64,000 nucleotides of DNA from positions 248,001-312,000 of the forward strand of contig NIVC01000136.1 in NCBI GenBank assembly GCA_002269645.1. The letters run 5' to 3'. A program made the translations under genes and the position numbers. The notes below the pieces were generated by a model. That model did not search any database, was not told where the DNA came from, and was given only the letters and a program-made list of their open reading frames with translations. Origin of the DNA: Macrostomum lignano. Its lineage: Eukaryota. Below, piece by piece: positions 13,763 through 57,400 of the stretch (positions are counted from its first letter, which is position 1; the number at the start of each line of letters is the position of its first letter).

Positions 13763-16700
13763 ATGCAGCTCTTTCAGTTGCGAGTTTCTGCAGCGTTGGC
13801 TCTGCTGCTCTGCTCGCTGGCAGCCGGCCGCCAGGTCTCCCAGTGCGCTCCCGCTGACTCTCCGCGGCTCCGCTTCGTGGCGCAGCTCAGCGTGAACGGC
13901 TGCGCGCTGTTCGTGCACGACACGGGAGCGAGCGACGGTCCGCACTTGGCAGTCGAGCCGCTCATGTGCGTGACGGACAGCCTGAGAGGCATTGTTCCCC
14001 GATTCGACTTCATCACCCAGCAGCTGTACTTTAGCGTTCCTGTATTGATGAGGGATGCTGGGATGCTGGCAGAGGCTCAGCGTCAACTGCGGCATCTGTC
14101 ACCGAGGTCTGTGAGCTTTGCCACGGTGACCAACATCAGCGTCTCAGCCGACACCCGCTCATCGATTCGGGTTTTGAGCTTCCTGTGGACTCCGAATGAG
14201 CCAATCGCCACTCTGAGACTGAGAATCGATGAAAATAAGTTTCATTCTTTTATAAGAGCACTAAGAATGTCGAAATTGAACCTTCTGAAAAATATCGTAC
14301 CATCAGATTTCAAGTGGATTAAGGGTCAATCTCATCTGAACTATTTACCTATGGAGACTCTTCAAAATGTGAGATTGTCAGCTTCAATCATTTCGAACGG
14401 CTCCTGTCATGACATTCAAAGCCGCATTATGCTGCAAAACGACAGCTTCATCGAAGTCGGCTTGTACAGGAAAAAATTCTTACCCGTGTGCCGACAGCTG
14501 AGGTTCAGTCGGTACGTCAATCTCGAGAACTGCTCTGCCCGAGCGCACCAGAGACTCGACATCAAGGGCCACTTCCTCATCGAGCCTCTGCTGTGCCACA
14601 ACATCTCCAGCTTGAGCAGCGAGTCAGTCAGGTATGACTACAGCCGAGACATGCATTACCTGAAGCTGGATCTGGTGCTGCAAGATGAGGCCACACGCGA
14701 TGCTGTGAGGACTCAGTTGGCCGACTTGTCGCCTCGCTCGGTCGATTTCATGCGGCTGTGGACTGCTGAGAGATCGGTGAGCTCTTCGTTGAGTGCTCGG
14801 TTCGAGGTCGGTCCGCTGATGGCGTCGGCAGACTGGAGGTCCGCTCAGCTGCGGCTGCTCTGCGGAAACTGGACGGAGTGCCGCGATCTCAAGTTAGCTG
14901 ACATTTTCTAGGAAATGTTTTTCCCTTTTTACTGGTTTTTACTGAAGCTACGAACGTTTAATTAGTCATAGCGAGTAATGGAGTTAAAAAGGATTATAAC
15001 TAAACATTTCTGACACAAAAAACGCAGAATCCTTACCCGATTTCTCATAATTTAACATATTTGTATGCAAGCTACGAAGTACATGATTTTTTCTACTACA
15101 TTTTCTCAAAAAAAGAGTTTTCCATATTGCGCATTTGACGCATTTGCATTTCTTTCTTTGAATAATGGCTAAATCGTATTTTCAATTCTACAGTTATTTT
15201 TTTCTTTCGTAGCACTGTGTCGTATAAAAAGTAATTGACGACTTTCAGGTCTGCTCTGCTGGCGGAGCCCTCTGACCTGTGGCGACACGTGCAGTGGCGG
15301 GTGACGTCGCTGGTTGCTGAGCAGTGCCTCTCCAAGTCTAGCCGAATCACTTCATCATGGAGAATGAAACCACCTGGAAGAGCAGACAGCTGCTCCAGTC
15401 TGAAGCCCTGCGCCAGACTGCAACGCGCCTCTGCTCGACGCACCGCGGCGTTTCAAATGCTTCCAGACGGTCGCTGGTTCCTGAAGATTCAGCAGCGACT
15501 TACTGGCAGAGTGAGTTTCCAACGAAACTGGACTGAGTACGAGACTGGCTTCGGTGACGGCACCGATTTCTGGATTGGTGAGAGGCAGTTTTGTATCGGC
15601 TAATATGCTAGTTGACACATGCACTTTCAACTGACGAAAGATAGATTGAAAGATTAACTGCTTGGTCATTAAAAAAATGTGAAGTTAAAGTTGCGCCATG
15701 ACGAAAATCTGTATATTGTCCTTTCCCGTCTGATTTGCGTTTCAAGTCTTCGGGCTGCTTCAGTTATTCAGGAGGCTTCTGCCACTATCCATCCATTGTC
15801 CGGTTCAGAGTGCGAGTAGAGTCCTGAATCCAAATTTGGGCTTCCTTGGCTCTGACTGTGTGTGCACAGCGGTCTTTTATACCGCTAGGACCGTCAATGG
15901 CACAATAGTGTGCTTCAGATAGTAGAAAGTTACCCAGGACTGGTCAATGAAAATGATTTTCAGACGCCTTTCAGACAACAAAAATGTCAAAAAACAAAAG
16001 TCCTCAACCTAATCTGAAGCAAAAGGTAGTAGAAAGCACTTCGGCCCTTTACGAGCTGTTCGAACAAGAAAGGCTGGCTTGCTGTGTTGGCAACCGCAGT
16101 GCTTTTGCTGAAATGGAGGAGCACCAGCCAGAGCAGCACCAGCCAGAGCAGCACCAGCCAGAGCAGCACCAGCCAGAGCAGCACCAGCCAGAGCAGCACC
16201 AGCCAGAGCAGCACCAGCCAGAGCAGCACCGGCCAACTCAGTTCTTCATCTGATGCTTGCAAATGACAGACTCTTAAATTTTTACCTTAGACTTGACCTT
16301 TACCTTTGACAATTAAAAACCCGTCTTACAGTCTCAGAACAGCAGGCCGCTCAGCTGGGATTTCAGAAGGCTTGAAATGGATCATTTTGGCAATTAAAAA
16401 AATTAGCTTCACCATCTGCTATGAAATGCACATTGGTAAAATATTTTTCTCAACATCCGAATGACGAGTCACCTGGCAGCAGCGGCGACAAGTCGAGCAG
16501 AAGTGACTCAGACTCAGCCGCTCTCCTCCCGCAGGTCTCTCCGCCATCCACTCGCTCAGCCAGGGCGGCGTCACCCTCAGAGTGGAGATGAAGCTGGGGA
16601 ACGGCTCTGAGCTGCATGCGGAGTACGCGGGATTCCAGGTGGGAGACGCCAGCACTGGGTATCGGATGACGTACCGAGAGATGCTGAGGGTCAGGTCCGT

Positions 16701-16944
16701 CAGCATTGACTCTTTGGAGCACCACAAAGGCATGCGGTTCTCCACGATGGACAGGGACAATGACGAAGCGAGTGATTCATGCTCAAACCAACGGGTAAAA
16801 GGAGGCTGGTGGTTCAACGAGTGCCTATACGTCAACCCTAACGGAATTTTCAAACTCCATTTTATTGGTTTGAAATATATGATCTGGACCTATGGCTCTG
16901 CTATTCTGTCTCTTCGTGAAATGCGGCTGATGCTGCAGATTTGA
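13763..16944 (+). CDS. Secreted fibrinogen-related protein, unit B: join(13763..14892,15249..15577,16535..16944), 622 aa
   Basis: Signal peptide MQLFQLRVSAALALLLCSLAAG. Intron phases (2, 1) join the exons in frame. FBG motifs: QQRLTGRVSFQRNWTEYETGFG, FWIG|LSAIHSL, FSTMDRDND, GGWWFNECLYVNPNG. The exon-1 donor (ctcaa|gttag) is inferred from phase and from where the paralogs diverge. Confidence 0.82.
16118..16232. repeat. 15-bp minisatellite (GAGCAGCACCAGCCA)n in intron 2 of unit B
   Basis: Tandem repeat read directly. Same unit at 55245-55277 and 56610-56812. Confidence 0.95.
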
Positions 16945-18689
16945 GCATCAAAACTGAGCAATGCAATAATGCACTCTGTTCATTGAAGTACAACTTTTTA
17001 CCAGTCGGAGCTTAACTAAAATGTTTTTTCAGAAATAATAGGCATGCTTATGCAGTTAAGTAACTACAAAATATAGTTTCTCATATCTCCCAGATTGCAA
17101 GAGTTTTACTGACTGAAAAAACGATTGCACAGAAACTGAAAAAGATATTTTTGCGGCCTTAAACTCAATAAACTTATTTTGATAGGCGCAAGCTATTTTC
17201 AACTATAAACTAACTAGAAAAAATGAGCAGCTTAACTCATGAACTCTAAAAACTCAAATATACAGATGCTTATCGCAGTTAATTCAAAGTTTTTACACTT
17301 GGATTTCCAATAAATTCAAATATCAGCTGAAGGCCTGAAAGTTTTGTTGCTACGAGCGCATGAGGCTTTTCTGAAATATTGCTTTACTGATACTGATCTA
17401 ATCTGCTATTAGTTTAGTCTACTAATCTACTATTCTAGCTCGTTAGTTCGCACGGCCCACCCCACCAGGAACAAACAGGCAGCAAATTGGCGTGGACTGC
17501 GAAAGAGCGCAGAGAGGCCAAAAGGAAACCGTCAAGTTGTCCCCCAACGCCAAAAAAGAAGCCGAAGAAAGTACAGCAAAAGCAGCAAGAGCGGGCAAGC
17601 ACAGCAAAAGTGGTGAGAGCTACTAACTGAGAGCTACCTTTCCTCTAGCTCTTTCGTCTCAAGTGAAGTGATTTTATTCATTTGGCCAGCGGCCTCAACA
17701 AGCAGCAGTTTGTGCGTACTCTTTGTGGCCAAAGATTAAACTTTCCGTCGCTGGACACCAAGCAAGCCAATTCCTGAACCTTGACATCAAACTCAGCCGC
17801 AGCACAGGTGGGTCGGCACGGCCCCATGGCAGCAGACTGGATTTCCTGAACATGCCCCATCAAGCGCACATGACAGCAGCCCAGCAGGCCGCCTGCACCG
17901 GGCTCGAGTAGACGATAGCGACTTTTTTGGATGATGAGGCGTAGGCCTGCTGAAGAAGCTTGGCGGCGGCGTCGTCGAGAGACCCAGGGAGGCGACCTGC
18001 AAAAGAGAAAGGCGGTAAAGGGAGAGCTGAGCGCATGACCGGCAAACTCTTGCGGGCTGACACAACATGTTGCATAGACTTGAAACACAAAATTCAGCAA
18101 TTCCTGACGGCAGTGCAGGCGGCAAGCCGCATCAGCAAAGGGAAGCAAATTTTGCTCCTGCAAGTTTAGTACTCGCAACTGAGATCTGAGAATATATTTA
18201 GGAAGTGTACTATATAGTTTAGTCACACATATTTTTAATAAACATTTTAGCAGCTTGTAGTGACAACTTGGTGGCCAAAATCCGCGCCGCGCAGTTGAAA
18301 AAATAAGTGATTGGTATTAGAAAAATGTGAAAAGCCGTTCATTGTTGCCTTTTTTATGTGATTGTTTTAGAGTTTTATTCAGTTATTAATAGACTCACGA
18401 GATTGGTCTGCAGTTTAAGACTGAGGATGGAGTCGGGTGGATTTTAGCACCGATTTTAATTCAGTTAATGTTATGTTAAACATTTCCTATCTTGCACAGC
18501 TGCGCCAGTGTGTGCATGGAAAGTACTTTGTACGCGATCTGCTGTCCTACAATTTCGGCAAAGTTATAGCAGCTTTAATGATTGATTATTACTTCACACA
18601 GTTGAAACCAGTGAACTTTGAGTGGCATATTAACATTCATTTCACCTTCATTTCTACATGTACATGAGGTCGTAACTTTTGCGTGTCGG

Positions 18690-19015: not shown

Positions 19016-19018
19016 TTC

Positions 19019-19049
<31 letters not shown>

Positions 19050-24292: not shown

Positions 24293-27200
24293 TTATCAGT
24301 ATTGTGCTGTCTGTTCTATCAGTATTGTGCTGTCTGTTCTATCAGTATTGTACTGTCTGTTCTATCAGTATTGTGCTGTCTGTTCTATCAGTATTGTGCT
24401 GTCTGTTCTATCAGTATTGTGCTGTCTGTTCTATCAGTATTGTACTGTCTGTTCTATCAGTATTGTGCTGTCTGTTCTATCAGTATTGTGCTGTCTGTTC
24501 TATCAGTATTGTGCTGTCTGTTCCATCAGTATTGTGCTGTCTGTTCCATCAGTATTGTGCTGTCTGTTCTATCAGTATTGTGCTGTCTGTTCTATCAGTA
24601 TTGTGCTGTCTGTTCTATCAGTATTGTACTGTCTGTTCTATCAGTATTGTGCTGTCTGTTCTATCAGTATTGTGCTGTCTGTTCCATCAGTATTGTGCTG
24701 TCTGTTCCATCAGTATTGTGCTGTCTGTTCCATCAGTATTGTGCTGTCTGTTCTATCAGTATTGTGCTGTCTGTTCTATCAGTATTGTGCTGTCTGTTCT
24801 ATCAGTATTGTGCTGTCTGTTCTATCAGTATTGTACTGTCTGTTCTATCAGTATTGTGCTGTCTGTTCTATCAGTATTGTGCTGTCTGTTCCATCAGTAT
24901 TGTGCTGTCTGTTCCATCAGTATTGTGCTGTCTGTTCCATCAGTATTGTGCTGTCTGTTCTATCAGTATTGTGCTGTCTGTTCCATCAGTATTGTGCTGT
25001 CTGTTCCATCAGTATTGTGCTGTCTGTTCCATCAGTATTGTGCTGTCTGTTTTATCAGTATTGTGCTGTCTGTTCCATCAGTATTGTGCTGTCTGTTCCA
25101 TCAGTATTGTGCTGTCTGTTCTATCAGTATTGTGCTGTCTGTTCCATCAGTATTGTGCTGTCTGTTCCATCAGTATTGTGCTGTCTGTTCCATCAGTATT
25201 GTGCTGTCTGTTCCATCAGTATTGTGCTGTCTGTTCCATCAGTATTGTGCTGTCTGTTCCATCAGTATTGTGCTGTCTATTCTATCAGTATTGTGCTGTC
25301 TGTTCCATCAGTATTGTGCTGTCTGTTCCATCAGTATTGTGCTGTCTGTTCCATCAGTATTGTGCTGTCTGTTCTATCAGTATTGTGCTGTCTGTTCTAT
25401 CAGTATTGTGCTGTCTGTTCCATCAGTATTGTGCTGTCTGTTTTATCAGTATTGTGCTGTCTGTTCTATCAGTATTGTGCTGTCTGTTTTATCAGTATTG
25501 TGCTGTCTGTTCTATCAGTATTGTGCTGTCTGTTCTATCAGTATCGTGCTGTCTGTTCTATCAGTATTGTGCTGTCTGTTCCATCAGTATTGTGCTGTCT
25601 GTTCTATCAGTATTGTGCTGTCTGTTCTATCAGTATTGTGCTGTCTGTTCTATCAGTATTGTGCTGTCTGTTCTATCAGTATTGTGCTGTCTGTTCTATC
25701 AGTATTGTGCTGTCTGTTCCATCAGTACTGTGCTGTCTGTTCCATCAGTATTGTGCTGTCTGTTCTATCAGTATTGTGCTGTCTGTTTTATCAGTATTGT
25801 GCTGTCTGTTCTATCAGTATTGTGCTGTCTGTTCCATCAGTATTGTGCTGTCTGTTCCATCAGTATTGTGCTGTGTGTTCCATCAGTATTGTGCTGTCTG
25901 TTCCATCAGTATTGTGCTGTCTGTTCCATCAGTACTGTGCTGTCTGTTCCATCAGTATTGTGCTGTCTGTTCTATCAGTATTGTGCTGTCTGTTCTATCA
26001 GTATTGTGCTGTCTGTTCCATCAGTATTGTGCTGTCTGTTCCATCAGTATTGTGCTGTCTGTTCTATCAGTATTGTGCTGTCTGTTCCATCAGTATTGTG
26101 CTGTCTGTTCTATCAGTATTGTGCTGTCTGTTCTATCAGTATTGTGCTGTCTGTTCTATCAGTATTGTGCTGTCTGTTCCATCAGTATTGTGCTGTCTGT
26201 TCTATCAGTATTGTGCTGTCTGTTCCATCAGTATTGTGCTGTCTGTTCTATCAGTATTGTGCTGTCTGTTCTATCAGTATCGTGCTGTCTGTTCTATCAG
26301 TATCGTGCTGTCTGTTCTATCAGTATTGTGCTGTCTGTTCTATCAGTATTGTGCTGTCTGTTCTATCAGTATTGTGCTGTCTGTTCTATCAGTATTGTGC
26401 TGTCTGTTCCATCAGTATTGTGCTGTCTGTTCCATCAGTATTGTGCTGTCTGTTCCATCAGTATTGTGCTGTGTGTTCCATCAGTATTGTGCTGTCTGTT
26501 CCATCAGTATTGTGCTGTCTGTTCTATCAGTATTGTGCTGTCTGTTCTATCAGTATTGTGCTGTCTGTTCTATCAGTATTGTGCTGTCTGTTCTATCAGT
26601 ATTGTGCTGTCTGTTCTATCAGTATTGTGCTGTCTGTTCTATCAGTATTGTGCTGTCTGTTCTATCAGTATTGTGCTGTCTGTTCTATCAGTATTGTGCT
26701 GTCTGTTCTATCAGTATTGTGCTGTCTGTTCCATCAGTATTGTGCTGTCTGTTCTATCAGTATTGTGCTGTCTGTTCTATCAGTATTGTGCTGTCTGTTC
26801 TATCAGTATTGTGCTGTCTGTTCTATCAGTATTGTGCTGTCTGTTCTATCAGTATTGTGCTGTCTGTTCTATCAGTATTGTGCTGTCTGTTCTATCAGTA
26901 TTGTGCTGTCTGTTCTATCAGTATTGTGCTGTCTGTTCTATCAGTATTGTGCTGTCTGTTCTATCAGTATTGTGCTGTCTGTTCTATCAGTATTGTGCTG
27001 TCTGTTCTATCAGTATTGTGCTGTCTGTTCTATCAGTATTGTGCTGTCTGTTCTATCAGTATTGTGCTGTCTGTTCTATCAGTATTGTGCTGTCTGTTCT
27101 ATCAGTATTGTGCTGTCTGTTCTATCAGTATTGTGCTGTCTGTTCTATCAGTATTGTGCTGTCTGTTCTATCAGTATTGTGCTGTCTGTTCTATCAGTAT

Positions 27201-28145
27201 TGTGCTGTCTGTTCTATCAGTATTGTGCTGTCTGTTCTATCAGTATTGTGCTGTCTGTTCTATCAGTATTGTGCTGTCTGTTCTATCAGTATTGTGCTGT
27301 CTGTTCTATCAGTATTGTGCTGTCTGTTCTATCAGTATTGTGCTGTCTGTTCTATCAGTATTGTGCTGTCTGTTCTATCAGTATTGTGCTGTCTGTTCTA
27401 TCAGTATTGTGCTGTCTGTTCTATCAGTATTGTGCTGTCTGTTCTATCAGTATTGTGCTGTCTGTTCTATCAGTATTGTGCTGTCTGTTCTATCAGTATT
27501 GTGCTGTCTGTTCTATCAGTATTGTGCTGTCTGTTCTATCAGTATTGTGCTGTCTGTTCTATCAGTATTGTGCTGTCTGTTCTATCAGTATTGTGCTGTC
27601 TGTTCTATCAGTATTGTGCTGTCTGTTCTATCAGTATTGTGCTGTCTGTTCTATCAGTATTGTGCTGTCTGTTCTATCAGTATTGTGCTGTCTGTTCTAT
27701 CAGTATTGTGCTGTCTGTTCTATCAGTATTGTGCTGTCTGTTCTATCAGTATTGTGCTGTCTGTTCTATCAGTATTGTGCTGTCTGTTCTATCAGTATTG
27801 TGCTGTCTGTTCTATCAGTATTGTGCTGTCTGTTCTATCAGTATTGTGCTGTCTGTTCTATCAGTATTGTGCTGTCTGTTCTATCAGTATTGTGCTGTCT
27901 GTTCTATCAGTATTGTGCTGTCTGTTCTATCAGTATTGTGCTGTCTGTTCTATCAGTATTGTGCTGTCTGTTCTATCAGTATTGTGCTGTCTGTTCTATC
28001 AGTATTGTGCTGTCTGTTCTATCAGTATTGTGCTGTCTGTTCTATCAGTATTGTGCTGTCTGTTCTATCAGTATTGTGCTGTCTGTTCTATCAGTATTGT
28101 GCTGTCTGTTCTATCAGTATTGTGCTGTCTGTTCTATCAGTATTA
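24293..28145. repeat. 23-bp satellite array, ~3.85 kb (~167 units)
   Basis: Tandem repeat read directly. CCATC and other variant units occur in the left part; essentially homogeneous from ~26750. Confidence 0.99.
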
Positions 28146-29220
28146 TAACGGTAGGAGTAACAAGCCATTTTTCCACCATTAGAAAAAGTTACAAACTGGA
28201 AAATGCTTCCTTGAAAATTTTTTTGCTGCGCCGTAACGGAGCAACGCAGGCGCATTTATTAAAAAACACAGGCTACCTTTTTTGTTGCGCACCTTCTCAA
28301 AGAAAAATAAGGTCGCCAGCTCTCCGGAATGTCGAGATATTCGACGATTTTGTCAGAAAGCTAAACACTATGTTCTCTAGTTTCGCTGTTGAAGCATTCA
28401 TGCCGTCGGTGCAATGACGGGGCCATAAGGGAATGCTTGACAGACTAGCCGAGGATGTAGAGCAGTGAGGTTTGCCCACTGTCGATGCTGGAAACTGGGC
28501 AGTTGGAGAATTTCGCATCGGGTGTTCACAGTCACTTCATAGTAGCCTGGCAGAACCATCGAATATCTCGACGGTCCGAAGGGCTGAAGATTTGATTGTT
28601 GTTTGATGAAGTGAAGGTGCGCAACAAAAACTATGAGAAAAAGGGAAAAAAACTCAGAGGGGGGATTCTACTCTTGGTAATTTTACGAGTAAACTCGGGT
28701 GTCTCCAGAAATTTGTATTGCATAAAATTATCTAAAAGCAAAAACCGAGATAGCACTTCATGAGCTGCAGATGAAAGAACGACCCAAGCTAAAAAACACC
28801 GTATTGAAGCTTAGACGAAGTTCGCATTGCAGACTGCAACAACAAAGCACCGGAACTTCCGAAAGGTCATCCAGCACAAACAGAAAATAACGCAGAAAGG
28901 CAGGTAAAATTGATGCGCTGCATAGCGCAAAGGTTTCGAGTGACGCATGCAGCGCCTCGGGATTCCAGACACTGTCTGGCAGAGATAAAAGTGCATTTAG
29001 TCACGAGATTCTGGCCAACCGAATCCCCAGCTGAGGAAAACAGTCTGATGCAAATGGCAAACCGCGTGACGCGTCTGGAATGCAAAGTGCAGCCTGCAGT
29101 CACGTGAAATTGATCCCATGGGCAGGGAATGCTTCTTCTGTATTTAAATGCAGCCATTTTACAGGATGCAGCTGCAATCCTCAGATCACCAATACAACAA
29201 CGAAAGGTGAACTTGACTCG

Positions 29221-41288: not shown

Positions 41289-44200
41289 ATGCAGCTCTTT
41301 CAGTTGCGAGTTTCTGCAGCGTTGGCTCTGCTGCTCTGCTCGCTGGCAGCCGGCCAGGTCTCCCAGTGCGCTCCCGCTGACTCTCCGCGGCTCCGCTTCG
41401 TGGCGCAGCTCAGCGTGAACGGCTGCGCGCTGTTCGTGCACGACACGGGAGCGAGCGACGGTCCGCACTTGGCAGTCGAGCCGCTCATGTGCGTGACGGA
41501 CAGCGTGAGAGGCATTGTTCCCCAATTCGACTTCATCACACAGCAGCTGTACTTCAGCGTTCCTGTATTGATGAGGGATGCTGGAATGCTCGCAGAGGCT
41601 CAGCGTCAACTGCGGCATCTGTCACCGAGGTCTGTGAGCTTCGCCACGGTGACCAACATCAGCGTCTCAGCCGACACCCGCTCATCGGTTGGGGTTTTGG
41701 GCTTCCTGTGGACTCCGGATGAGTCAGTAGCCACTCTGAGACTTGGCTTTGGAGAGAACATTCGATATGAAACTCTACATCCCGAAAACATTGTTCTAAG
41801 ACTTCTGAATATCGACTCAATGAGAACCTTCCTAAATCAAAATACCCAGATGCAGAGTCGAGAAAACAATGAAAATTCAACAATCGATGCTCTTAAAAGG
41901 GTGAAGCTCTCAGCTACTCTTCTGTCGAATGGTTGTTTCCATGAGGCTCAGAGCCGCGTCATGCTGCAAAACGACAGCTTCATTGATGTCAGCGTGTACA
42001 AGCAAAAATTCTTACCCGCGTGCCGACAGCTGCGGTTCAATCGGTACGTCAATCTCGAGAACTGCTCTGCTCGAGTGCACCAGAGACTCGACATTGAGGG
42101 CCACTTCCTTATCGAGCCTCTGCTGTGCCACAACATCTCCAGCTTGAGCAGCGAGTCAGTCAGGTATGACTACAGCCGAGACATGCACTACCTGAAGCTG
42201 GATCTGGTGCTGCAAGATGAGGCCACACGCGATGCTGTGAGGACTCAGTTGGCCGACTTGTCGCCTCGCTCGGTCGACTTCATGCGGCTGTGGACTGCTG
42301 AGAGATCGGTGAGCTCTTCGTTGAGTGCTCGGTTCGAGGTGGGTCCGCTGATGGCGTCGGCAGACTGGAGGTCCGCTCAGCTGCGGCTGCTCTGCGGAAA
42401 CTTGATGGAGTGCCGCGATCTCAGGTTGGCTGACATTTTGTTATAGGTTGAAACCTTTGAAGACTTTATCTTTCGTTTACCGTGATTTTATATTTTATAC
42501 TTTTGCTTTCGAGCTGCTCTTCTCTGAACAAGTCATTATGAGTTTTGTAGTGAGATTAAGAAAACTTTTTAGTATCAGTTTGGAAGAAGAGTAAATTTAA
42601 GTCTGTAAGTTTCAGGTGGCCCGAATTTATGACGTAAAAAACACACAAGCACAAATAGCATAGTTTTATAGTTTATGAAATAATTGCATGTAAGCGGCAT
42701 CATTACTATTTACCACATATACCCAGACTATAATATTTTACATTATTTACCATTACTTGCTTTCGACGCCGCTTGCTTGTTTGACTTTATCTATTTATTT
42801 ATTCTTAGCACTGTGCCGTTTACAAAAAACAATTGACGACTTCCAGGGCTGCTGTGCTGGCGGAGCCCGCTGACCTGTGGCGACACGTGCAGTGGCGGGG
42901 GACTTCGCTGGTTGCTGAGCAGTGCCTCCTAAAGTCCAACCGAATCACTTCATCATGGAGAATGAAGCCATCTGAAGATACAGTCAGCTGCTCCAGTCTG
43001 AAGTCCTGCGCCAGGCTGCAATGCGCCTCTGCTCAACGCACAGCGAACTCTTCCAGTGCGGTTCAACTGCAGCCAGACGGTCGCTGCTTCCTGAAGATTC
43101 AGCAGCGACTTACTGGCAGAGTGAGCTTCCAACGAAACTGGACTGAGTACGAGACTGGCTTCGGTGACGGCACTGACTTCTGGATCGGTGAGTGGCTTGT
43201 CAATTGGTGTGCGTCAGGAACCGAAGCAGGTCTTATCAACTGCCATAGGAGTGTCATTTAGGCCGGACAATCAATAACGTTCGCTGGTTGGGGGCTCTAT
43301 CAATTTTAGCTTAACTTTTTTCTTTTTTTCTGGTGAGCGGCTTCTTTCATCGATTTTTCATATTGCGTGTCAGGAATGGAAGCAGATCTTGTGCACTTAT
43401 TAGCAGAAGGCTAGTTGACTAATTCTAAGTGAATGGTGGAATGCATTCAATTGATGGAGGGGTTTGAAGGATTGCTCAGCTGGATAAAAATGTTCAGTTA
43501 ACGTTGCGTCATAAGCTGGGTGATGCTCAATTTTGTATTGGCGTTGCGAGGTCTTGTGCGGCTTCAGTAAAACTTCTTTTTTCATGGAGTGCACCAAAAA
43601 GATGAGACCGATGAGACGCTTTTTTCATTCTTAGATCGAGGAGAGACCTGAATACATGCTTCCCCATAATTTTGAGGGAAACAGGAATATTGAGCTGCAT
43701 TTTTTTCAATGAAATCCAAAGTATTACGAAGGAGTTTTGTTGTTAAAGATTCGCTAGTAGTTCATTTAGTATAGCTCGCAGACCAAGCATTAAGCACAGC
43801 TGCTACAGTTGACCCATACATTGTGCAAGAAACAATTCAGATTTGCTGCATGCAATAATCTGAAGAAAGACTCGTCGTAGGCGTCACAGGGAAAAAAAGC
43901 CTGTTTGAGGTTGAAGGCGAAGATCCGCAGGCTCTTCCTGTTTGAGGTTGAAGGCGAAGATTCGCAGGTTTGCTGAGAGAGCTGCTGCTGGCTTCATGCA
44001 CAGTTTTGTGACGACTGCTTTACTCTGGTTGCTGTCATCTGTTTGCGCTTGTGCCAATCATGAGCAGCGCTCTCACGCCGACTGCTTTTCTCTGGTTGCT
44101 GTCATCTGTTTGCGCTTGTGCCAATCATGAGCAGCGCTCTCATGCCGACGCGCTCCTTTGTCAGTGAAACCAAATTGTTTCTGTCAAAGCGCACTCGTTT

Positions 44201-45154
44201 AGTCAACTGCGCGCTCGGGTCCCAAAAAATATTCAGACGACGCGTTTGAGTATTCCACCAGTTCAGCCCTGCAATTATGAATTGGGATGTTGCATTTTTT
44301 ATAAGAACGCCACCTCGAATTTTTTAATTGAATGGCAGCATTTGCATCCCCAAACAGGACACCAGCCCACGCACGCAGAGCCAAGCACTCCCCCCATCTG
44401 TCCGCGCTCTGTTGGGGGAGGGAGAACGAAACCAAAATGACACTAGCAGGACAAAGGAGTAAAACTTGGTTAGGGACTTGTCGAAGCCATTCACAGACCA
44501 GCATATACTCGCCTACAATCCTATATACATAAATGATGACCCGCTCTTAAGTATATTCAATGTTGAAACTCTGAGCTTTCAAAGAAAGGCCAGTCTGAGT
44601 TGAGGAGCAAAAAGACCGTCCAGCTGAAACATCACCAGCTTTCAAGTTGGCTGCATAAGCAGAGGTCATTTGCGCATTAATCCAGATTTTCAGCACAAGA
44701 CATGTTAAACGCTTAACATAATTTATATGCACTTTTGTTATGCAACACCTTTTGCGTGTTCATCAGCATCCGAATTTCGACTTACCTGGCAGCAGCGGCG
44801 ACTAGCCGAGCAGAAGTGACTCAGACTCAGCCGCTGTCCTCCCGCAGGTATCGGATGACGTACCGAGAGATGCTGAGGCACAGGTCCAGTGCCAGCTTTG
44901 ACGTTTTGGAGCGCAGCAAAGCCACGCAGTTCTCCACGATGGACAGGGACAATATCAAAGAAAGAAGTCCTTTATGCTTCAAGTCTATAGGAAAGAGAGC
45001 CTGGTGGTTTGACAGCTGCTACTACTTCAACCCTAATGGAATTTTCCCTACGCGAGAAACAGTAGATTTTAGATATACTTTTAGGTATATGAGCTGGCGG
45101 CATGGCTCTGCCCGTCTGTCTTTTCGTGAAGTGCGGCTGATGCTGCAGATTTGA
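41289..45154 (+). pseudogene. FReP unit D: exons 41289..42424 and 42847..43187 intact; exon 3 (44848..45154) has a 124-nt deletion, giving ...WIGIG* (495 aa if expressed)
   Basis: The acceptor cccgcag|GT is followed directly by ATCGGATGA. Relative to unit B, 16537-16660 is missing, with GGT microhomology. The downstream FBG sequence remains open in another frame. Confidence 0.8.
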
Positions 45155-49796: not shown

Positions 49797-50035
49797 GTAT
49801 TGTGCTGTCTGTTCTATCAGTATTGTGCTGTCTGTTCTATCAGTATTGTGCTATCTGTTCTATCAGTATTGTGCTGTCTGTTCTATCAGTATTGTGCTGT
49901 CTGTTCTATCAGTATTGTGCTGTCTGTTCTATCAGTATTGTGCTGTCTGTTCTATCAGTATTGTGCTGTCTGTTCTATCAGTATTGTGCTGTCTGTTCTA
50001 TCAGTATTGTGCTGTCTGTTTTTATCAGTTTTTAT
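49797..50035. repeat. 23-bp satellite array right of the tyrosine-recombinase element
   Basis: Tandem repeat read directly. Confidence 0.95.
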
Positions 50036-52035: not shown

Positions 52036-53296
52036 TCTCATTCTCGGCCGACTTTAGAATTACGAAGGAAGACCACATAGAGGAGACGAGCTCTACAGAC
52101 CCGCCCGACAAAGAAGAGGAGCCCGCACCAGTAAGTGATCAATGAATTCTGTTCCCAGGCCTGAGGTCTGGAAGTGGGAGTTTACGAGTGACTGATCACC
52201 ACTCTTTAACATTTCTTTAAGTTCAATCTTTGTAACAGTGAGTTCAATGCTGTTTATTAATTTTTTTATTACTAAAATACAATAGATATGGCTGGTTTTA
52301 TTTAATAAAACATACAAATAATACGATAAACAATCACTATCGAGGGTCCAGACGAGCGCAGTTGCCTTGTTGCCATGCCTTCAAGAGGCCGACGGCGTCA
52401 CCCTGATGACAGACTGAATAAGAGTCTGGCTGAGGAGGTACCAGCCGTTGAGGTTTTCTCATTATTGAGATTCTGACATGGGCGTAAAAGGGTGCATTAA
52501 ATACGCCGGCGCCCTTGGGAAGAATCCGAAAATCCGGAAAATTTGTTCGGGATGAGAGGAAAATCAGCGTTAGAAGTTTTAATTCTAAAACAACCCCGAT
52601 ATCTAAAGAAACCGGAACTATCAAGAATTACCTGTATTACCTGAATTATCTGGGCCAATGTACAAGATAATACGGCTTGCGCTGCAGATTGAAGAAATCT
52701 AAAAAGACAAACTTTGACACAGTTCGCACTGCAGACGAAAAAAAACAAAACGCAAAACATTTTCGACACGACATGCAGTGTAAACAGAAACTCCTGCAGC
52801 GAGGCAGGTAAAATTGATGCGCTGCATGGCGCAAAGGCTGCGAGTGACGCATGCAGTGCCTCGGGATTCCAGACACTGTCTGGCAGAGATAAAAGTGCAT
52901 TTAGTCGCGGGATTCTGGCCAACCGAATCCCCAGCTGAGGCAAACAGTCTGATGCAAATCCCAAACCGCGTGACGCGTCTGGAATGCAAAGTGCAGCCTG
53001 CAGTCACGTGAAATTTATCCGATAGGCAGGGAATGCTTCTTCTGTAAATAAATGCAGCCATTTTACAGAATGCAGCTGCAATCCTCAGCTTACCGATACA
53101 ACAACGAAAGGTGAACTTGACTCGATGCAGCGCTTTCAGTTGCGAGTTTCTGCAGCGTTGGCTCTGCTGCTCTGCTCGCTGGCAGCCGGCCAGGTCTCCC
53201 AGTGCGCTCCCGCTGACTCTCCGCGGCTCCGCTTCGTGGCGCAGCTCAGCGTGAACGGCTGCGCGCTGTTCGTGCACGACACGGGAGCGAGCGACG
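52036..53296 (+). repeat. Segment duplicated at 62740-64000 (offset 10704 bp)
   Basis: Identical ORF translations at the same offset (e.g. 52093/62797, 52337/63041, 52497/63201). No differences seen by eye. Confidence 0.93.
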
Positions 53297-56231
53297 GTCC
53301 GCACTTGGCAGTCGAGCCGCTCATGTGAGTGACGGACAGCCTGAGAGGCATTGTTCCCCGATTCGACTTCATCACCCAGCAGCTGTACTTCAGCGTTCCT
53401 GTATTGATGAGGGATGCTGGAATGCTCGCAGAGGCTCAGCGTCAACTGCGGCATCTGTCACCGAGGTCTGTGAGCTTCGCCACGGTGACCAACATCAGCG
53501 TCTTAGCCGACAACCGCTCATCGGTTCGGGTTTTGGGCTTCCTGTGGACTCCGGATGAGCCAGTAGCCACTCTGAGACTCGGCTTCAAAAGGATTGTTGT
53601 CAAGACCGATTCAAGTAAAGCTTCAGGTTCAAGAATTTTACAGGAAAGTTTACCTCTCCAGTTCTTTCAATCAGTGTATAACCAGCTGAAGCGCAGTGAT
53701 GACTTTGGAAGCTCACCACAAGAGGCTCTTGAAAAGGTGAAGATATCAGCTTTTATCATTTCGAACGGATCTTGTCATGAGGTTCAGAGCCGCGTCATGC
53801 TGCAAAACGACAGCTTCATCGAAGTCGGCTTGTACAGGAAAAAATTCTTACCCGTGTGCCGACAGCTGCGGTTCATTCGCTACGTCAAACTCGAGAACTG
53901 CTCTGCCCGAGTGCACCAGAGACTCGACATCAAAGGCCACTTCCTCATCGAGCCTCTGCTGTGCCACAACATCTCCAGCTTGAGCAGCGAGTCAGTCAGG
54001 TATGACTACAGCCGAGACATGCACTACCTGAAGCTGGATCTGGTGCTGCAAGATGAGGCCACACGCGATGCTGTGAGGACTCAGTTGGCCGACTTGTCGC
54101 CTCGCTCGGTCGATTTCATGCGGCTGTGGACTGCTGAGAGATCGGTGAGCTCTTCGTTGAGTGCTCGGTTCGAGGTCGGTCCGCTGATGGCGTCGGCAGA
54201 CTGGAGATCCGCTCAGCTGCGGCTGCTCTGCGGAACCTTGACGAAGTGCCGCGATCTCAGGTTGGTTGGAATTTTCTGAGGGGTTTTCAGCTTTTATTGC
54301 ACCAGATTCAAAAAAGAGTTTACTTTCTAGACTCTCTTTACTTCACAGGACTTCTTGAGTGTTTGCAAGAGTAATACAAAATCCCTTTTCGTGTCAGCTT
54401 GGTTGCTATTGAGCGATCAGATCAGGCTATCAATGCTTTTGTATTGGTTTTTTTTCTTTTTTAAATTTTTTTGGCGTTCAAAAATGGATTTGACAATATC
54501 CAGGTCTGCTGTGCTGGCGGAGCCCGCTGACCTGTGGCGACACTTGCAGTGGCGGGTGACATCGCTGGTTGCTGAGCAGTGCATCTCCAAGTCCAGCCAA
54601 ATCACTTCATCATGGAGAATGAAAGCGTCTGAAGATGCAGTCAGCTGCTCCAGTCTGAAGTCCTGCGTCAGACTGCACAGCGCCTCTGCTCCACGCACAG
54701 CGGCGTTTCAAATCCTGCCAGACGGTCGCTGGTTTGTGAAAATTCAGCAGCGACTTACTGGCAGTGTGAGTTTCCAACGAAGCTGGACTGAGTACGAGAC
54801 TGGCTTCGGTGACAGCACTGACTTCTGGATCGGTGAGCGGCGTTTGTGTATCAGCTAATATTGTGTGACGGAGGGTTGGTAGCAGATCTTGTTAATCTTA
54901 TGGTGAAATTATGGTTGAATCATGCACTTTCAACTGATGTAATACGGACTGAAAGATTAACTGCCCGGCTAAATAAAAAAGTTAAGTTGAAATTGCGCCA
55001 TGATGGCAATGGTCAACACTGGCCTTTTCCGCCTGATTGGCGTTTCGGGTCCTTATTTTTGGTCTTTGGTTTTTTATACAGCTAGGACTATCAATGCCAA
55101 ATAGTTTTTTTTCAGATGACTAAAATGTCATCCAGGACTCATCAATGAAAAGTATTTGACACTCCGTCCAGACAACGAAAATGTCGAAAAATGGAAGTCC
55201 CAAAGCTACTCTAAAGCATAAGGCAGTAGACAGCGGTTCAGTCCAGCCAGAGCAGCACCAGCCAGAGCAGCACCAGCTTCTACGAGTACAACCATTGTTG
55301 CAGTTTTTGCGTATATTTCTATGAAGTTTGCATAAAAAACCTTGTTCCCCGACTCAAAACATTAACTAGTAAATTTTGCGCTGTTCACGTCACGTATAAT
55401 ATTAATGGCCTCATGAGGCCTTATGATAGATACATGGCGTACTTAAGAAAGGTTAGAACTTATTGACTTAAAAAAATCCACAAAATTTTCCTTTCGTGCG
55501 CGCCCTTCTACGAGATATTTATCTGAGTCGCAGTCAAGTTTCCGAAGCGATGCATTCAGATGACATTTCGCTTCAGTCCTGGCCTGATACAATTAAAACC
55601 CGTCTTGAAGTCTAAGAACAGCCGGCCACTCATCTGGGACATCAGAAGGCTTTGAATGGATAATTTAGTCAGTAAACGAATTTAGCTGCACCATCTGCTA
55701 TGGAACGCACATTGTAAAAAATTTATCCCAGGATCCAAATGACGAATCACCTGACAGCAGCGGCGACTAGCCGAGCAGAAGTGACTCAGACTCAGCCGCT
55801 CACCTCCCGCAGGTCTCTCCGCCATCCACTGGCTCAGCCAGGGCGGCGCCACCCTCAGAGTGGAGATGAAGCTGTGGAACGGCTCTGAGCTGCATGCGGA
55901 GTACGCTGGATTCCAGGTGGGAGACGCCAGAACTGGGTATCGGATGACGTACCGAGAGATGCTGAGGGACAGGTTAAATGTCAGCTATGTCGCTTTGGAG
56001 AACAGCAAAGGCATGCAGTTCTCTACGATGGACAGGGACAATGACGTACACAGAGGAATCTCATGCTCAAACAGATGGGGAAAAGCAGGCTGGTGGTTTA
56101 ATGCTTGTCTACACGTCAACCCTAACGGACTTTTTCCTTCGCGGGAGACAACAGATGGCAGCTATATCGTCTGGAACTCTGGCTCTGTCTGGCTGCTTCT
56201 TCGTGAAGTGCGGCTGATGCTGCAGATTTGA
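53125..56231 (+). pseudogene. FReP unit E: join(53125..54260,54504..54832,55813..56231) with TGC>TGA at codon 68 (53326-53328)
   Basis: All exons and splice sites are otherwise intact and in frame; one nonsense codon relative to the paralogs. Confidence 0.82.
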
Positions 56232-56609: not shown

Positions 56610-56812
56610 GAGCACCAGCCAGAGCAGCACCAGCCAGAGCAGCACCAGCCAGAGCAGCACCAGCCAGAGCAGCACCAGCCAGAGCAGCACCAGCCAGAGA
56701 AGCACCAGCCAGAGCAGCACCAGCCAGAGCAGCACCAGCCAGAGCAGCACCAGCCAGAGCAGCACCAGCCAGAGCAGCACCAGCCAGAGCAGCACCAGCC
56801 GGAGCAGCACCG
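56610..56812. repeat. 15-bp minisatellite (GAGCAGCACCAGCCA)n, ~13 units
   Basis: Tandem repeat read directly. Confidence 0.96.
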
Positions 56813-57074
56813 GCCGACTCAGTTCTTCAGCTGATGCTTGCAACTGACTGACTCATAAATTAATTTTGTCTTAGACTTCTCCTTACTTCTTCTTTACCTT
56901 AGATTTTTTCATTTAGTCAAGTTTGCGAACAGAAGTATTTAGATGACATTTCGCTTCAGTACTGACCTGATACAATTAAAAACCCGTCTTGCAATCTCGG
57001 AACAGCCGGCCGCTCAGCTGGGATATCGGAAGGCTTAAAATGGATAGTTTAGGCAATTAACAAATTTTAATTTA

Positions 57075-57400
57075 GGCAATCCAGGTAGGAGACGCCAGCA
57101 CTGGGTATCGGATGACGTACCGAGAGATGCTGAGGGACAGGTCAAGTGTCAGCTGGGATGCTTTGGAGCTCAGCAAAGACATGCGGTTCTCCACGATGGA
57201 CAGGGACAATGACGTATGGGATGCTGGTTCATGCTCCAATAAATATGGAAAAGGAGGCTGGTGGCTTTAACGCTGCCATCAATTCAACCCTAACTGACTT
57301 TATCCTTCAGGGGATTTAGCACATCACAGGAATACGGTCAGGCACTCTGGCTCTGCCTATTGAACTTTTCGTGAAATGAGGCTGATGCTGCAGAGTTGAG
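57075..57400 (+). pseudogene. Second, 5'-truncated FBG exon-3 copy with stop codons, downstream of unit E
   Basis: ...GYRMTYREMLRDRSSVSWDALELSKDMRFSTMDRDNDVWDAGSCSNKYGKGGWWL*RCHQFNPN*... The normal acceptor and exon start are missing. Confidence 0.85.

What the first reader, a model, noticed from the sequence alone, without database searches (positions are those of the whole stretch)
13763..57400. Tandem array of secreted FRePs with an unrecognised N-terminus: candidate diversified recognition-receptor system
Seen: at least five full or partial three-exon units plus orphan and pseudo exons. Each encodes a signal peptide, a ~350-aa region I cannot assign to a family, a Cys-containing linker and a C-terminal FBG domain. 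Established: FBG-domain lectins (ficolins, tachylectin-5, snail FREPs with IgSF domains) act in invertebrate pattern recognition and often expand by birth and death. Inference: this is a FReP family with a different N-terminal architecture, diversifying in place as an immune or recognition repertoire.
Basis: partly seen in the sequence, partly recalled or inferred. Interest (0 to 1): 0.85.

Follow-up and report, generated by a model that had tools for sequence, protein, structure and literature searches.

The report
Flatworm fibrinogen-lectin gene array, new stalk domain
This is a transposon-riddled tandem array of Macrostomum lignano genes for secreted fibrinogen-type lectins whose N-terminal part is two copies of a genus-restricted domain of unknown fold; this array is an undescribed but not revolutionary variant of the invertebrate FReP theme, and an immune role remains untested.

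Summary
The window (Macrostomum lignano, assembly Mlig_3_7) carries a head-to-tail array of three-exon genes on the + strand. Two are intact (U1, U2). U3 has a 124-nt deletion in exon 3. U4 has a TGA at codon 68. U5 is cut by the window end. There is also an orphan exon 2 and a truncated orphan exon 3.

The exon 1–2–3 joins use GT-AG sites. They reproduce database proteins exactly, and the GenBank models of paralogues on this assembly are RNA-seq derived.

The "unassignable ~350 aa" is two copies of a ~150–190-aa repeat, here called the R-domain. It has no Pfam or PDB sequence match. Its AlphaFold model is confident (pLDDT 92) and finds no similar PDB fold. An exhaustive profile search of 1.84 billion proteins found it in 13 clusters: all named members are M. 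lignano, and the other two are unassigned contigs.

The same repeat occurs once or twice before an FBG domain, and six times before a C-type lectin domain. That resembles snail FREP/CREP logic without IgSF domains.

Paralogues are mosaics. Some blocks are near-identical (dS 0–0.12). Two zones are hypervariable: the inter-repeat linker and the ligand-binding P-subdomain of FBG.

"Secreted diversified lectin family" is well supported. "Immune receptor" is plausible but untested, and published expression classes are mixed.

The parts
4327..6314 (+). U0 remnant. Orphan exon 2 (5471-5806) with 1.1 kb of upstream intron (4327-5470) and 250 nt of downstream intron (6065-6314). Its exon 1 and exon 3 are missing, and LTR-retrotransposon pieces lie on both sides.
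   Evidence: blastn against U2: exon 98.2%, introns 93.6% and 95.2%; tblastn; Pfam PF00147 6.8e-9
13281..13762 (+). Conserved upstream block (promoter and 5'UTR) of U1. Equivalent blocks lie at 28720-29220, 40878-41288, 52709-53124 and 63413-63828.
   Evidence: 87-91% nucleotide identity between units. TransDecoder-style proteins P0002-P0005 and P0051 begin with translated 5'UTR from this block.
13763..14892 (+). U1 exon 1: signal peptide, R-domain 1, hypervariable linker HV1 (14204-14419) and R-domain 2.
   Evidence: Translation equals P0001; donor CTCAA|GTTAGC
15249..15577 (+). U1 exon 2: C-terminal sub-domain of R-unit 2 and the start of the FBG domain.
   Evidence: Acceptor TTTCAG|G, donor ATTG|GTGAGA; Pfam PF00147 positions 39-80
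16535..16944 (+). U1 exon 3: FBG B and P sub-domains with the Ca2+-site motif FSTMDRDND and the C...GGWWF..C disulphide pair, then the stop codon.
   Evidence: Pfam PF00147 2.8e-20; alignment to tenascin-R and angiopoietin-related FBG
29221..30362 (+). U2 exon 1 (HV1 at 29659-29889, bounded by in-frame GT..AG).
   Evidence: Translation equals P0003; HV1 borders
33477..33814 (+). U2 exon 2 (intron 1 is 3.1 kb).
34534..34958 (+). U2 exon 3.
41289..42424 (+). U3 exon 1, open reading frame intact (HV1 at 41727-41951, same type as U2).
42847..43187 (+). U3 exon 2.
44848..45154 (+). U3 exon 3 remnant. A 124-nt deletion directly after the acceptor shifts the frame, and the remaining part is only 73% identical to U2. 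This makes U3 a pseudogene or a truncated product.
   Evidence: DNA alignment; spliced translation ends FWIGIG*; blastn 72.7%
53125..54260 (+). U4 exon 1 with an in-frame TGA at 53326-53328 (Cys68 codon); HV1 at 53563-53787.
   Evidence: The counterpart on NIVC01003286.1 (L003), 97-98% identical, has TGC and encodes intact P0005.
54504..54832 (+). U4 exon 2.
55813..56231 (+). U4 exon 3.
57080..57393 (+). Orphan exon 3, truncated at its 5' end, with no acceptor. The same fragment follows the P0005 gene in L003.
63829..64000 (+). U5: the first 57 codons of exon 1, cut off by the window end. 62740-64000 is 100% identical to 52036-53296 (the U4 upstream region and start).
24294..28144 (.). 23-bp satellite array between U1 and U2. 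Further arrays of the same unit lie at 1-1185, 35586-36536 and 49795-50029, that is, between successive units. They are probably part of the ancestral duplicated segment.
   Evidence: TRF; self-blastn

Best explanation
The locus is a birth-and-death tandem array of Macrostomum-specific genes for secreted, N-glycosylated lectins.

Each intact gene (U1, U2) encodes, in order:
- a signal peptide;
- two copies of a lineage-restricted alpha/beta repeat (the 'R-domain', about 150 aa plus a 40-aa helix/hairpin tail), separated by a hypervariable linker;
- a C-terminal fibrinogen-related (FBG) domain that keeps the Ca2+-site motif and the P-domain disulphide.

Inferred mechanism, step 1. The FBG head binds glycans, probably acetylated ones, on microbes, mucus or other extracellular targets. 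The R-domains act as a rigid stalk, or as an oligomerisation or partner-binding arm. This would be comparable to IgSF domains in snail FREPs or CCP domains in selectins. In the same species the same R-domain is stacked six times in front of a C-type lectin head.

Inferred mechanism, step 2. Copies are generated by unequal exchange between units that each carry a 23-bp satellite. They are partly homogenised by gene conversion: the signal peptide with R1, the core of R2, and the FBG A/B part. The inter-repeat linker and the pocket-forming part of FBG are left to diverge. The result is a repertoire of heads with different binding surfaces. Copies also decay, as in U3, U4 and the orphan exons.

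What is shown: gene structure, the exon joins, domain composition, taxonomic restriction, the pairing with two lectin heads, and the mosaic divergence.

What is inferred: secretion, glycan binding, the stalk role, gene conversion, and any immune role.
For: Gene models:
- The GT-AG joins reproduce P0001 and P0003 exactly.
- Paralogues with the same architecture have RNA-seq-derived GenBank models.

FBG domain:
- Pfam PF00147.
- 4.6e-26 to tenascin-R FBG and 2e-23 to ficolin-1, with the DRDND and C..GGWW..C motifs aligned.

R-domain:
- The two halves of the N-terminus are homologous (hhalign probability 96%, E 1.5e-9).
- An iterated HMM finds 2 copies in the FBG family, 1 in P0030 and 6 in the CTLD proteins P0025 and P0036.
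- AlphaFold on 30 aligned repeats gives pLDDT 92.1 and pTM 0.85.
- No Pfam or PDB sequence hit. No PDB fold hit (best E 0.05, TM <= 0.25).
- Only 13 clusters matched among 1.84e9 representatives. All named members are M. lignano; the other two are a Logan run and a JGI metagenome contig of unknown organism.

Secretion (read from the sequence):
- A hydrophobic N-terminus in all family branches.
- 8 N-X-S/T sequons and 14 Cys in the mature U1 protein.
- No transmembrane segment at the C-terminus.

Mosaic divergence:
- dS is 0.00-0.12 in R1, R2 and FBG-A/B. It exceeds 1 in HV1 and is 0.29-0.48 in FBG-P.
- The entropy profile peaks at aa 151-200 and 561-610.
- Introns are mostly unalignable, while the exon-1 blocks are 93-98% identical.

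Array decay.

Family size: orthogroup OG0000014 holds 26 M. lignano models plus M. spirale and M. hystrix transcripts (PMC7336406).
Against: - There are no binding, localisation or challenge data.
- The FBG A sub-domain is atypical. The canonical 'CDM..GGGW' segment and, in U1 and U4, its cysteines are missing.
- Positions that line the acetyl pocket in tachylectin-5A and ficolins (recalled from the literature, not tested here) are not conserved. Some copies may therefore bind something other than acetylated sugars, or nothing at all.
- Omega in the variable zones is below 1. Relaxed constraint explains them as well as diversifying selection does.
- The low dS of the conserved blocks could also reflect recent duplication plus replacement of the variable blocks, rather than gene conversion.
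- Two of the four complete units in this window are broken.
Confidence: 0.7

Rival explanations
1. Immune pattern-recognition repertoire in the strict sense. The paralogues would be humoral receptors for microbes or parasites, induced by infection. Their diversity would be maintained by pathogen-driven selection, as a functional analogue of snail FREP/CREP.
For: - It is a secreted FBG lectin family, and variation is focused on the FBG P sub-domain.
- The same N-terminal module is combined with a second lectin head, CTLD, as in the snail VIgL families (known from the literature).
- The family is large and genus-wide.
- Most members are positionally 'Non-Specific' and none falls in a neoblast or germline FACS class, which points to somatic differentiated cells.
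Against: - No infection or expression-after-challenge data exist for Macrostomum.
- Omega is below 1.
- Some members are Tail- or Testes-region specific and up-regulated in grouped worms.
Confidence: 0.3
2. Reproduction-related secreted proteins, for example prostate or seminal-fluid components, or proteins of sperm or egg coats. In this reading the family is fast-evolving and copy-number dynamic because of sexual selection, and the lectin head binds partner glycans.
For: - Orthogroup OG0000014 includes members classed as Tail-region and Testes-region specific, and carries the 'OvI_up' flag (higher in octets than in isolated worms) (PMC7336406 Table S5).
- Lineage-restricted, rapidly diverging tandem families are typical of Macrostomum reproductive genes (theme of PMC7336406).
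Against: - The orthogroup's final class is 'positional_mix', with Non-Specific members, no germline_FACS class and no in situ annotation.
- It is unknown which class the genes of this window belong to.
Confidence: 0.2
3. Structural mucus or extracellular-matrix lectins. R-domain rods with terminal lectin heads would cross-link glycans of the glycocalyx, rhabdite mucus or basal matrix. Paralogue variation would be mostly neutral drift in surface loops and linkers.
For: - The proteins are rod-like and multi-repeat. The CTLD relatives have six repeats, and P0025 also has an N-terminal Thr/Pro/Ser-rich mucin-like stretch.
- Body-wide 'Non-Specific' expression.
- Omega is 0.6-0.9 in the variable zones.
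- The closest sequence relatives of the FBG head in the PDB include the matrix proteins tenascin-R and tenascin-C.
Against: - Nothing links the family to mucus or matrix proteomes.
- The strong conservation of R1 and R2 next to a variable head looks more like a scaffold-plus-variable-binder design.
Confidence: 0.15
4. The array is mostly decaying, and the apparent diversity is pseudogene drift or assembly redundancy of the DV1 genome.
For: - U3 is frameshifted, U4 has a stop codon, and there are orphan exons.
- A 1261-bp stretch is duplicated at 100% identity.
- The Mlig_3_7 assembly is known to hold 180 Mb of duplicated blocks at 95% identity or more (PMC5730564).
Against: - U1 and U2 are intact, with canonical splice sites.
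- HV1 stays open and in frame in all four units and in all paralogues, despite near-saturated divergence.
- The conserved blocks have omega of about 0.4.
- The family is transcribed in three species.
- An intact counterpart of U4 exists.
Confidence: 0.05

Closest known systems
Snail FREPs and the VIgL families (FREP, CREP, GREP) of Biomphalaria glabrata
   Same: - Secreted proteins with one or two N-terminal non-lectin modules followed by a C-terminal FBG domain.
- The same N-terminal module is also found in front of a C-type lectin head.
- A multigene family with clustered, partly pseudogenised copies and localised sequence diversity.
   Different: - The N-terminal modules here are not IgSF domains. 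They have no Pfam Ig hit, and Fab chains appear in Foldseek only at E >= 0.05 and TM <= 0.25.
- They are a Macrostomum-restricted alpha/beta repeat.
- Somatic diversification, haemocyte expression and parasite binding are known for snail FREPs and are untested here.
Ficolins and tachylectin-5A/5B (FBG pattern-recognition lectins)
   Same: - A C-terminal FBG domain with the Ca2+-site motif (D-x-D-x-D) and the P-domain disulphide; ficolin-1 scores 2e-23.
- Secreted proteins.
   Different: - There is no collagen-like Gly-X-Y stalk.
- The FBG A sub-domain is shortened.
- The positions equivalent to the acetyl-pocket residues vary between paralogues (sequence comparison; residue roles recalled from the literature).
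- The oligomeric state is unknown.
Tenascin and angiopoietin-type FBG proteins
   Same: The best PDB sequence matches of the FBG head are tenascin-R at 4.6e-26 and ANGPTL2 at 1.4e-24.
   Different: There are no EGF/FN3 repeats and no coiled coil. The N-terminus is the R-domain pair.
M. lignano R-domain/C-type-lectin proteins (BOX15_Mlig001894g2, Mlig001890g2, Mlig001546g1; P0026, P0035, P0036) and the Logan transcript protein P0025
   Same: They share the R-domain, including its CxxxxxC tail and linker sub-domain, a signal peptide and a C-terminal lectin head.
   Different: They have six R-units instead of two, and a CTLD (PF00059) instead of FBG. They are not in this window.
Medusavirus stheno uncharacterised protein A0A7S7YF07 (BFVD model)
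   Same: It is the only structural neighbour found for the R-unit model: Foldseek E 3.1e-4, probability 1.0, TM 0.56 over 169 columns.
   Different: Sequence identity is 16%. The function is unknown, and the target is itself a predicted model. There is no evidence of common descent.

Membership tests
FBG-domain proteins (fibrinogen-related proteins, Pfam PF00147) | C-terminal fibrinogen beta/gamma globular domain detectable by profile | tested here: met
   PF00147 at 3e-8 to 2.8e-20 on single exons, all above the curated cut-off. phmmer against the PDB gives 4.6e-26 for tenascin-R FBG and 68 FBG chains in total.
FBG-domain proteins (fibrinogen-related proteins, Pfam PF00147) | Complete three-sub-domain FBG, including the A-domain disulphide (C...CDM) | tested here: inconclusive
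   Pfam covers profile positions 35-80 and 96-217 of 221. The 'CDM..GGGW' segment aligns with 'FQMLPDGRWF' in U1, where the Cys is lost. U2-type copies keep two extra Cys in this region.
FBG lectins (ficolin / tachylectin-5 type) | Ca2+-binding motif and the neighbouring disulphide in the P sub-domain | tested here: met
   FSTMDRDND and C569...GGWWF..C583 align with the tenascin-R and ANGPTL2 motifs. They are conserved across paralogues.
FBG lectins (ficolin / tachylectin-5 type) | Ca2+-dependent binding of acetylated sugars; agglutination | not testable with these tools
   This needs recombinant protein, glycan arrays or GlcNAc-agarose binding.
Ficolins | Collagen-like Gly-X-Y region N-terminal of FBG | tested here: not met
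   The translated sequences contain no Gly-X-Y run, and there is no Collagen Pfam hit.
Snail-type FREPs (IgSF + FBG) | One or two N-terminal IgSF domains | tested here: not met
   There is no Ig-family Pfam hit on exon 1 or on 30 repeat units, even at E <= 1. Foldseek matches to Fab chains are not significant (E >= 0.05, TM <= 0.25). The model is mixed alpha/beta.
Snail-type FREPs (IgSF + FBG) | Somatic diversification (point mutation or gene conversion in individuals) | not testable with these tools
   This needs amplicon deep sequencing from single worms. Only germline mosaicism between paralogues is seen here.
Modular 'variable N-terminal module + interchangeable lectin head' systems (VIgL-like logic) | The same non-lectin module is combined with at least two different lectin heads in one species | tested here: met
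   R-domain with FBG (this family, P0022, P0023, P0028-P0030) and R-domain x6 with CTLD PF00059 (P0025, P0026, P0035, P0036).
Secreted proteins | N-terminal signal peptide, no membrane anchor | tested here: inconclusive
   The sequence MQLFQLRVSAALALLLCSLAAG|RQ has the n-, h- and c-region pattern. All family branches have a hydrophobic N-terminus, and the protein ends inside the FBG domain. No signal-peptide predictor was available.
Immune-induced pattern-recognition receptors | Induction by, or binding to, microbes or parasites; expression in immune-competent tissue | not testable with these tools
   No such dataset was found. The published classes for the orthogroup are mixed.

The most novel reading that the evidence does not exclude
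Macrostomum flatworms have evolved their own modular lectin-receptor system. It is built on a genus-restricted domain with a fold not represented in the PDB. This domain carries either FBG or C-type lectin heads. In the FBG branch the system is diversified in the germline: gene conversion homogenises the scaffold, while the head pocket and an optionally spliced linker (HV1, bounded by in-frame GT..AG in three of four units) vary. This would be a convergent counterpart of the snail FREP/CREP immune repertoire in a phylum where no such system is known.
Probability: 0.3. Interest if true: 0.75.

Novelty: new variant of a known kind. Interest (0 to 1): 0.55.

Why it matters
Flatworm humoral recognition is almost unexplored. 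No paper in the searched library describes flatworm FBG lectins.

M. lignano is a transgenic, RNAi-amenable model, so a compact and well-mapped array with two intact genes gives a direct handle. Paralogue-specific HV1 probes, knock-down and infection assays are all feasible.

The R-domain is a new, confidently modelled domain family. It is absent from Pfam and has no PDB neighbour. Its pairing with two unrelated lectin heads is a second, independent example of the 'one scaffold, several lectin heads' design known from snails. This bears on how invertebrates build recognition diversity.

The sharp alternation of near-identical and saturated blocks within single exons also makes the locus a good case for studying gene conversion boundaries.

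If the family turns out to be reproductive or structural, it is still a lineage-specific expansion. It is the 15th entry (73 sequences) in the published table of orthogroups for four Macrostomum species, and it currently has no name or function.

Tried and rejected
- AlphaFold on the whole 378-aa N-terminus with a 9-sequence alignment gave pLDDT 36.7 and was discarded. Re-cutting into single repeat units solved this.
- Foldseek against the PDB found nothing significant. A PDB profile search found nothing.
- Pfam scans of 30 repeat units at E <= 1 gave only scattered chance hits.
- The search for homologous proteins with the repeat profile returned only 3 already known proteins, because of the word-index limit.
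- The look-up of encoding contigs for P0001 and P0009 found nothing on record.
- Literature and supplement searches for Mlig identifiers or 'fibrinogen' were empty. These covered Grudniewska 2018, the 2024 multiome preprint and the 2026 aneuploidy paper.
[quoted passage not shown] I rejected this: they have different sizes and different domains.
- I considered prokaryotic or viral origin. I rejected it on the spliced gene structure and the M. lignano identity of all named hits.
- Site-pattern counts show conflicting partitions in every block but give no clean conversion tracts. I did not run a formal recombination or site-selection test.

Full report
**Origin and overall layout**

The window is eukaryotic. 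Every named relative of its proteins is from the free-living flatworm Macrostomum lignano. Paralogous loci were retrieved from GenBank assembly GCA_002269645.1 (Mlig_3_7, NIVC01 contigs).

The window is a mix of four kinds of sequence:
- A head-to-tail gene array on the + strand.
- Retroelements on the – strand:
  - LTR-type pol at 1253-3339 and 6806-10369.
  - A non-LTR reverse transcriptase at 19696-21681.
  - A DIRS-like element with reverse transcriptase and tyrosine recombinase at 45920-49608.
- A 23-bp satellite at 1-1185, 24294-28144, 35586-36536 and 49795-50029.
- Two microsatellites.

**Checking the observation**

I mapped the units with tblastn using the family proteins, by reading the splice junctions and with blastn using U2 pieces as queries.

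| Unit | Exon 1 | Exon 2 | Exon 3 | State |
|---|---|---|---|---|
| U1 | 13763-14892 | 15249-15577 | 16535-16944 | intact |
| U2 | 29221-30362 | 33477-33814 | 34534-34958 | intact |
| U3 | 41289-42424 | 42847-43187 | 44848-45154 | 124-nt deletion in exon 3 |
| U4 | 53125-54260 | 54504-54832 | 55813-56231 | TGA at codon 68 |
| U5 | 63829-window end | – | – | cut by the window end |

- U1 and U2 are intact. Both introns are GT-AG, in phase 2 and phase 1.
- The spliced translations are identical to database proteins P0001 and P0003.
- U3 lacks 124 nt immediately after the exon-3 acceptor. The spliced frame therefore stops after '...FWIGIG'.
- U4 carries TGC->TGA at 53326-53328.
  - A 97-98% identical copy on another contig (L003) has TGC at that position and encodes intact P0005.
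- U5's first 1261 bp, including the upstream region, are 100% identical to the corresponding part of U4.
- An orphan exon 2 lies at 5471-5806. It is 98% identical to U2 exon 2, and pieces of both flanking introns are preserved.
- A 5'-truncated exon 3 lies at 57080-57393.

- The array reaches beyond the stated coordinates on both sides.
- Only two of the four complete units are intact.

**Are the exons really joined?**

Three lines of evidence support the joins.
- The joins use canonical splice sites and keep the reading frame.
- Several database models of the family begin with translated 5'UTR ('...TTTKGELDSMQLF...'), including P0051 for U1 and P0003 for U2. This is typical of ORFs called on transcripts.
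- The GenBank annotation of Mlig_3_7 (BOX15_ locus tags) was produced only from RNA-seq: StringTie and TACO assemblies, the mapped de novo transcriptome and TransDecoder (PMC5730564).
  - This annotation contains paralogues with the same exon-1-plus-FBG protein: Mlig019144, Mlig006328 and Mlig015699.

I could not inspect reads for this locus. The support is therefore strong but indirect.

**The N-terminal region**

Exon 1 has no Pfam hit. Its two halves are homologous to each other (hhalign probability 96%, E 1.5e-9).

I ran an exhaustive HMMER profile search of 1.84 billion representative proteins. It found only 13 clusters.
- All named members are M. lignano.
- One cluster is a 4758-nt contig from a Logan run. 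It carries an uninterrupted 1462-codon ORF, so it is most likely an mRNA (L001).
- One cluster is a 1.5-kb JGI metagenome contig (L002).

An iterated HMM over these proteins shows a repeat of about 150 aa.
- It occurs twice in the FBG family. Four further, more divergent M. lignano branches have the same layout (P0022, P0023, P0028, P0029).
- It occurs once in a 452-aa FBG protein (P0030).
- It occurs six times, with a period of about 195 aa, in 1.3-1.46-kaa proteins that end in a C-type lectin domain (P0025, P0026, P0035, P0036; PF00059).

The full repeating unit includes a 'LRLxCxxxxxCxxL' hairpin and a helix/beta tail. In the genes of this window, the tail of unit 2 is encoded by the first half of exon 2.

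Structure prediction gave two different results.
- AlphaFold on the whole N-terminus with 9 close sequences failed (pLDDT 36.7).
- AlphaFold on one unit with 30 aligned repeats gave pLDDT 92.1 and pTM 0.85. The model is a mixed alpha/beta domain of about 11 strands and 4 helices.

Database comparisons of this unit were as follows.
- Foldseek found no PDB neighbour (best E 0.05, TM <= 0.25).
- Foldseek found one BFVD neighbour, an uncharacterised Medusavirus protein (E 3e-4, TM 0.56).
- A profile search against PDB sequences found nothing.
- Pfam scans of all 30 units at E <= 1 found nothing meaningful.

The N-terminus is thus a genuinely unannotated, lineage-restricted domain. I call it the R-domain.

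**The FBG head**

Exons 2 and 3 encode a bona fide FBG domain.
- The 'FSTMDRDND' Ca2+-site motif and the 'C...GGWWF..C' disulphide pair are present.
- The A sub-domain is atypical. The canonical 'CDM..GGGW' stretch is replaced, and U1- and U4-type copies lack the cysteines that U2-type copies retain.

**Pattern of variation**

Among eight close paralogues, the entropy profile is almost flat at zero over aa 11-130, 271-360 and 451-540. It peaks at aa 151-200 and at aa 561-610.
- The first peak is HV1, the end of R-unit 1 and the inter-repeat linker.
- The second peak is the FBG P sub-domain around and after the disulphide.

The P-domain positions that vary include the residue four after the first Cys and the residue after the second Cys.
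- From my recollection of the tachylectin-5A and ficolin structures, these positions line the acetyl-binding pocket.
- This mapping is an inference. I did not test it here.

At the codon level, the four window units behave as follows.

| Block | dS | omega |
|---|---|---|
| R1, R2, FBG-A/B | 0.00-0.12 | ~0.4 |
| HV1 | >1 (0.20 for U2 vs U3) | ~0.6 (0.96 for U2 vs U3) |
| FBG-P | 0.29-0.48 | 0.75-0.91 |

- Introns are mostly unalignable, whereas the exon-1 blocks are 93-98% identical. That is higher than the upstream flank, at 87-91%.
- Site patterns conflict within every block.

The simplest reading is an old array in which gene conversion homogenises the scaffold-coding blocks, while the two variable zones escape or are kept apart. 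Recent duplication with replacement of the variable blocks is not excluded. Positive selection is not demonstrated.

HV1 is open and in frame in all units (72-77 codons) despite near-saturated divergence. This argues that it is translated.
- In U2, U3 and U4, HV1 is bounded by an in-frame GT...AG.
- Two database models (P0008, P0011) lack exactly this segment.
- In U1 both borders are mutated.
- HV1 may therefore be optionally spliced. The provenance of those two models is unknown.

**Family size and expression**

In Brand et al. 2020 (PMC7336406) the family is orthogroup OG0000014.
- It is the 15th entry in the orthogroup table.
- It holds 73 sequences: 26 M. lignano gene models in 20 clusters at 95% identity, plus M. 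spirale and M. hystrix transcripts.
- It has no member from M. pusillum.

The orthogroup's annotations are as follows.
- The positional classes are Non-Specific, Tail and Testes, with a final class of 'positional_mix'.
- It carries 'OvI_up', meaning higher expression in octets than in isolated worms.
- It has no neoblast or germline FACS class and no in situ data.

I could not tell which class the genes of this window belong to. No paper in the library discusses flatworm FBG lectins.

**Interpretation**

- Well supported (about 0.7): this is a birth-and-death array of genes for secreted lectins. Each has a new scaffold domain and a diversifying FBG head.
- Inferred: the R-domain works as a stalk or an oligomerisation or partner-binding arm. 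The inference rests on its stacking (one, two or six copies) in front of two unrelated lectin heads, and on its strong conservation next to a variable head.
- The design resembles snail FREP/CREP. Membership in that family is excluded, because the defining IgSF domains are absent. Ficolin membership is excluded by the lack of a collagen region.
- Open: whether the biological role is immune recognition (about 0.3), reproduction (about 0.2) or mucus/matrix cross-linking (about 0.15). These three refine the best explanation and are not exclusive across paralogues.

**Novelty and score**

The gene models exist in GenBank and UniProt as 'hypothetical protein' or 'Fibrinogen C-terminal domain-containing protein', and the family exists as an unnamed orthogroup. 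None of the following has been described:
- the R-domain;
- its repeat nature and its predicted fold;
- its pairing with CTLD heads;
- the mosaic divergence;
- the structure of this array.

I class it as a new variant of a known kind and score interest at 0.55. It is a useful and testable entry into flatworm lectin biology, and it adds a new domain family. Lineage-specific FBG expansions are common, however, and the immune claim is not yet supported by any functional or expression evidence.

Noticed in passing
window 1-1185, 24294-28144, 35586-36536, 49795-50029: The same 23-bp satellite (unit GTTCTATCAGTATTGTGCTGTCT; up to 167 copies at 98% match) sits between successive FBG units. It looks like part of the ancestral duplicated segment and could mediate unequal exchange.
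   Followed up: partly
window 29659-29889, 41727-41951, 53563-53787 (and 14204-14419 in U1): The hypervariable segment HV1 inside exon 1 is bounded by in-frame GT...AG in U2, U3 and U4, but by AT...AA in U1. Database protein models P0008 and P0011 lack exactly this segment, so HV1 may be an optionally spliced 'exitron'.
   Followed up: partly
window 52036-53296 and 62740-64000: A 1261-bp stretch is duplicated at 100% identity, 10.7 kb apart (the U4 and U5 upstream regions plus the start of exon 1). This is either a very recent tandem duplication or assembly redundancy of the DV1 genome.
   Followed up: no
window 53326-53328; L003 (NIVC01003286.1): The only defect of U4 is a single TGC->TGA change. 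A 97-98% identical copy on another contig is intact. This copy could be a homeologue, an allele, or a sign that the U4 change is a sequencing error.
   Followed up: partly
window 13379-14095, 28867-29550, 40935-41618, 52699-53454, 63403-63981 (- strand): Long antisense ORFs (192-251 aa) overlap the conserved 5' part of exon 1 in every unit. They are probably a by-product of the conserved GC-rich coding sequence. There is no evidence that they code.
   Followed up: no
window 1253-3339, 6806-10369, 19696-21681, 45920-49608 (- strand): Retroelements are inserted in the array: LTR-type pol (rve, RVT_1, RNase H), a non-LTR reverse transcriptase, and a DIRS-like element with reverse transcriptase, tyrosine recombinase and a SAP-domain ORF. 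The LTR element at 6.8-10.4 kb separates the orphan exon 2 from where its exon 3 should be.
   Followed up: partly
L002 (JGI metagenome 3300040801, 1516-bp contig) 231-653 and 1040-1435: An environmental contig encodes two R-domain-like segments, 29% and 37% identical to P0003. Together with the Logan transcript L001, it is one of only two matches without an organism label. It is presumably DNA of an uncultured macrostomid.
   Followed up: no
model m75768eea80d6 (P0001 aa 237-425): The only structural neighbour of the R-unit model is a predicted structure of an uncharacterised Medusavirus stheno protein (A0A7S7YF07; Foldseek E 3.1e-4, TM 0.56, 16% identity).
   Followed up: no
L004 (NIVC01002158.1) 2442-3372: On another contig, upstream of the intact P0002 gene, lies a partial unit. 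It has exon 1 with an internal deletion, followed by exon 2. Decaying copies therefore accompany intact ones elsewhere in the genome too.
   Followed up: no
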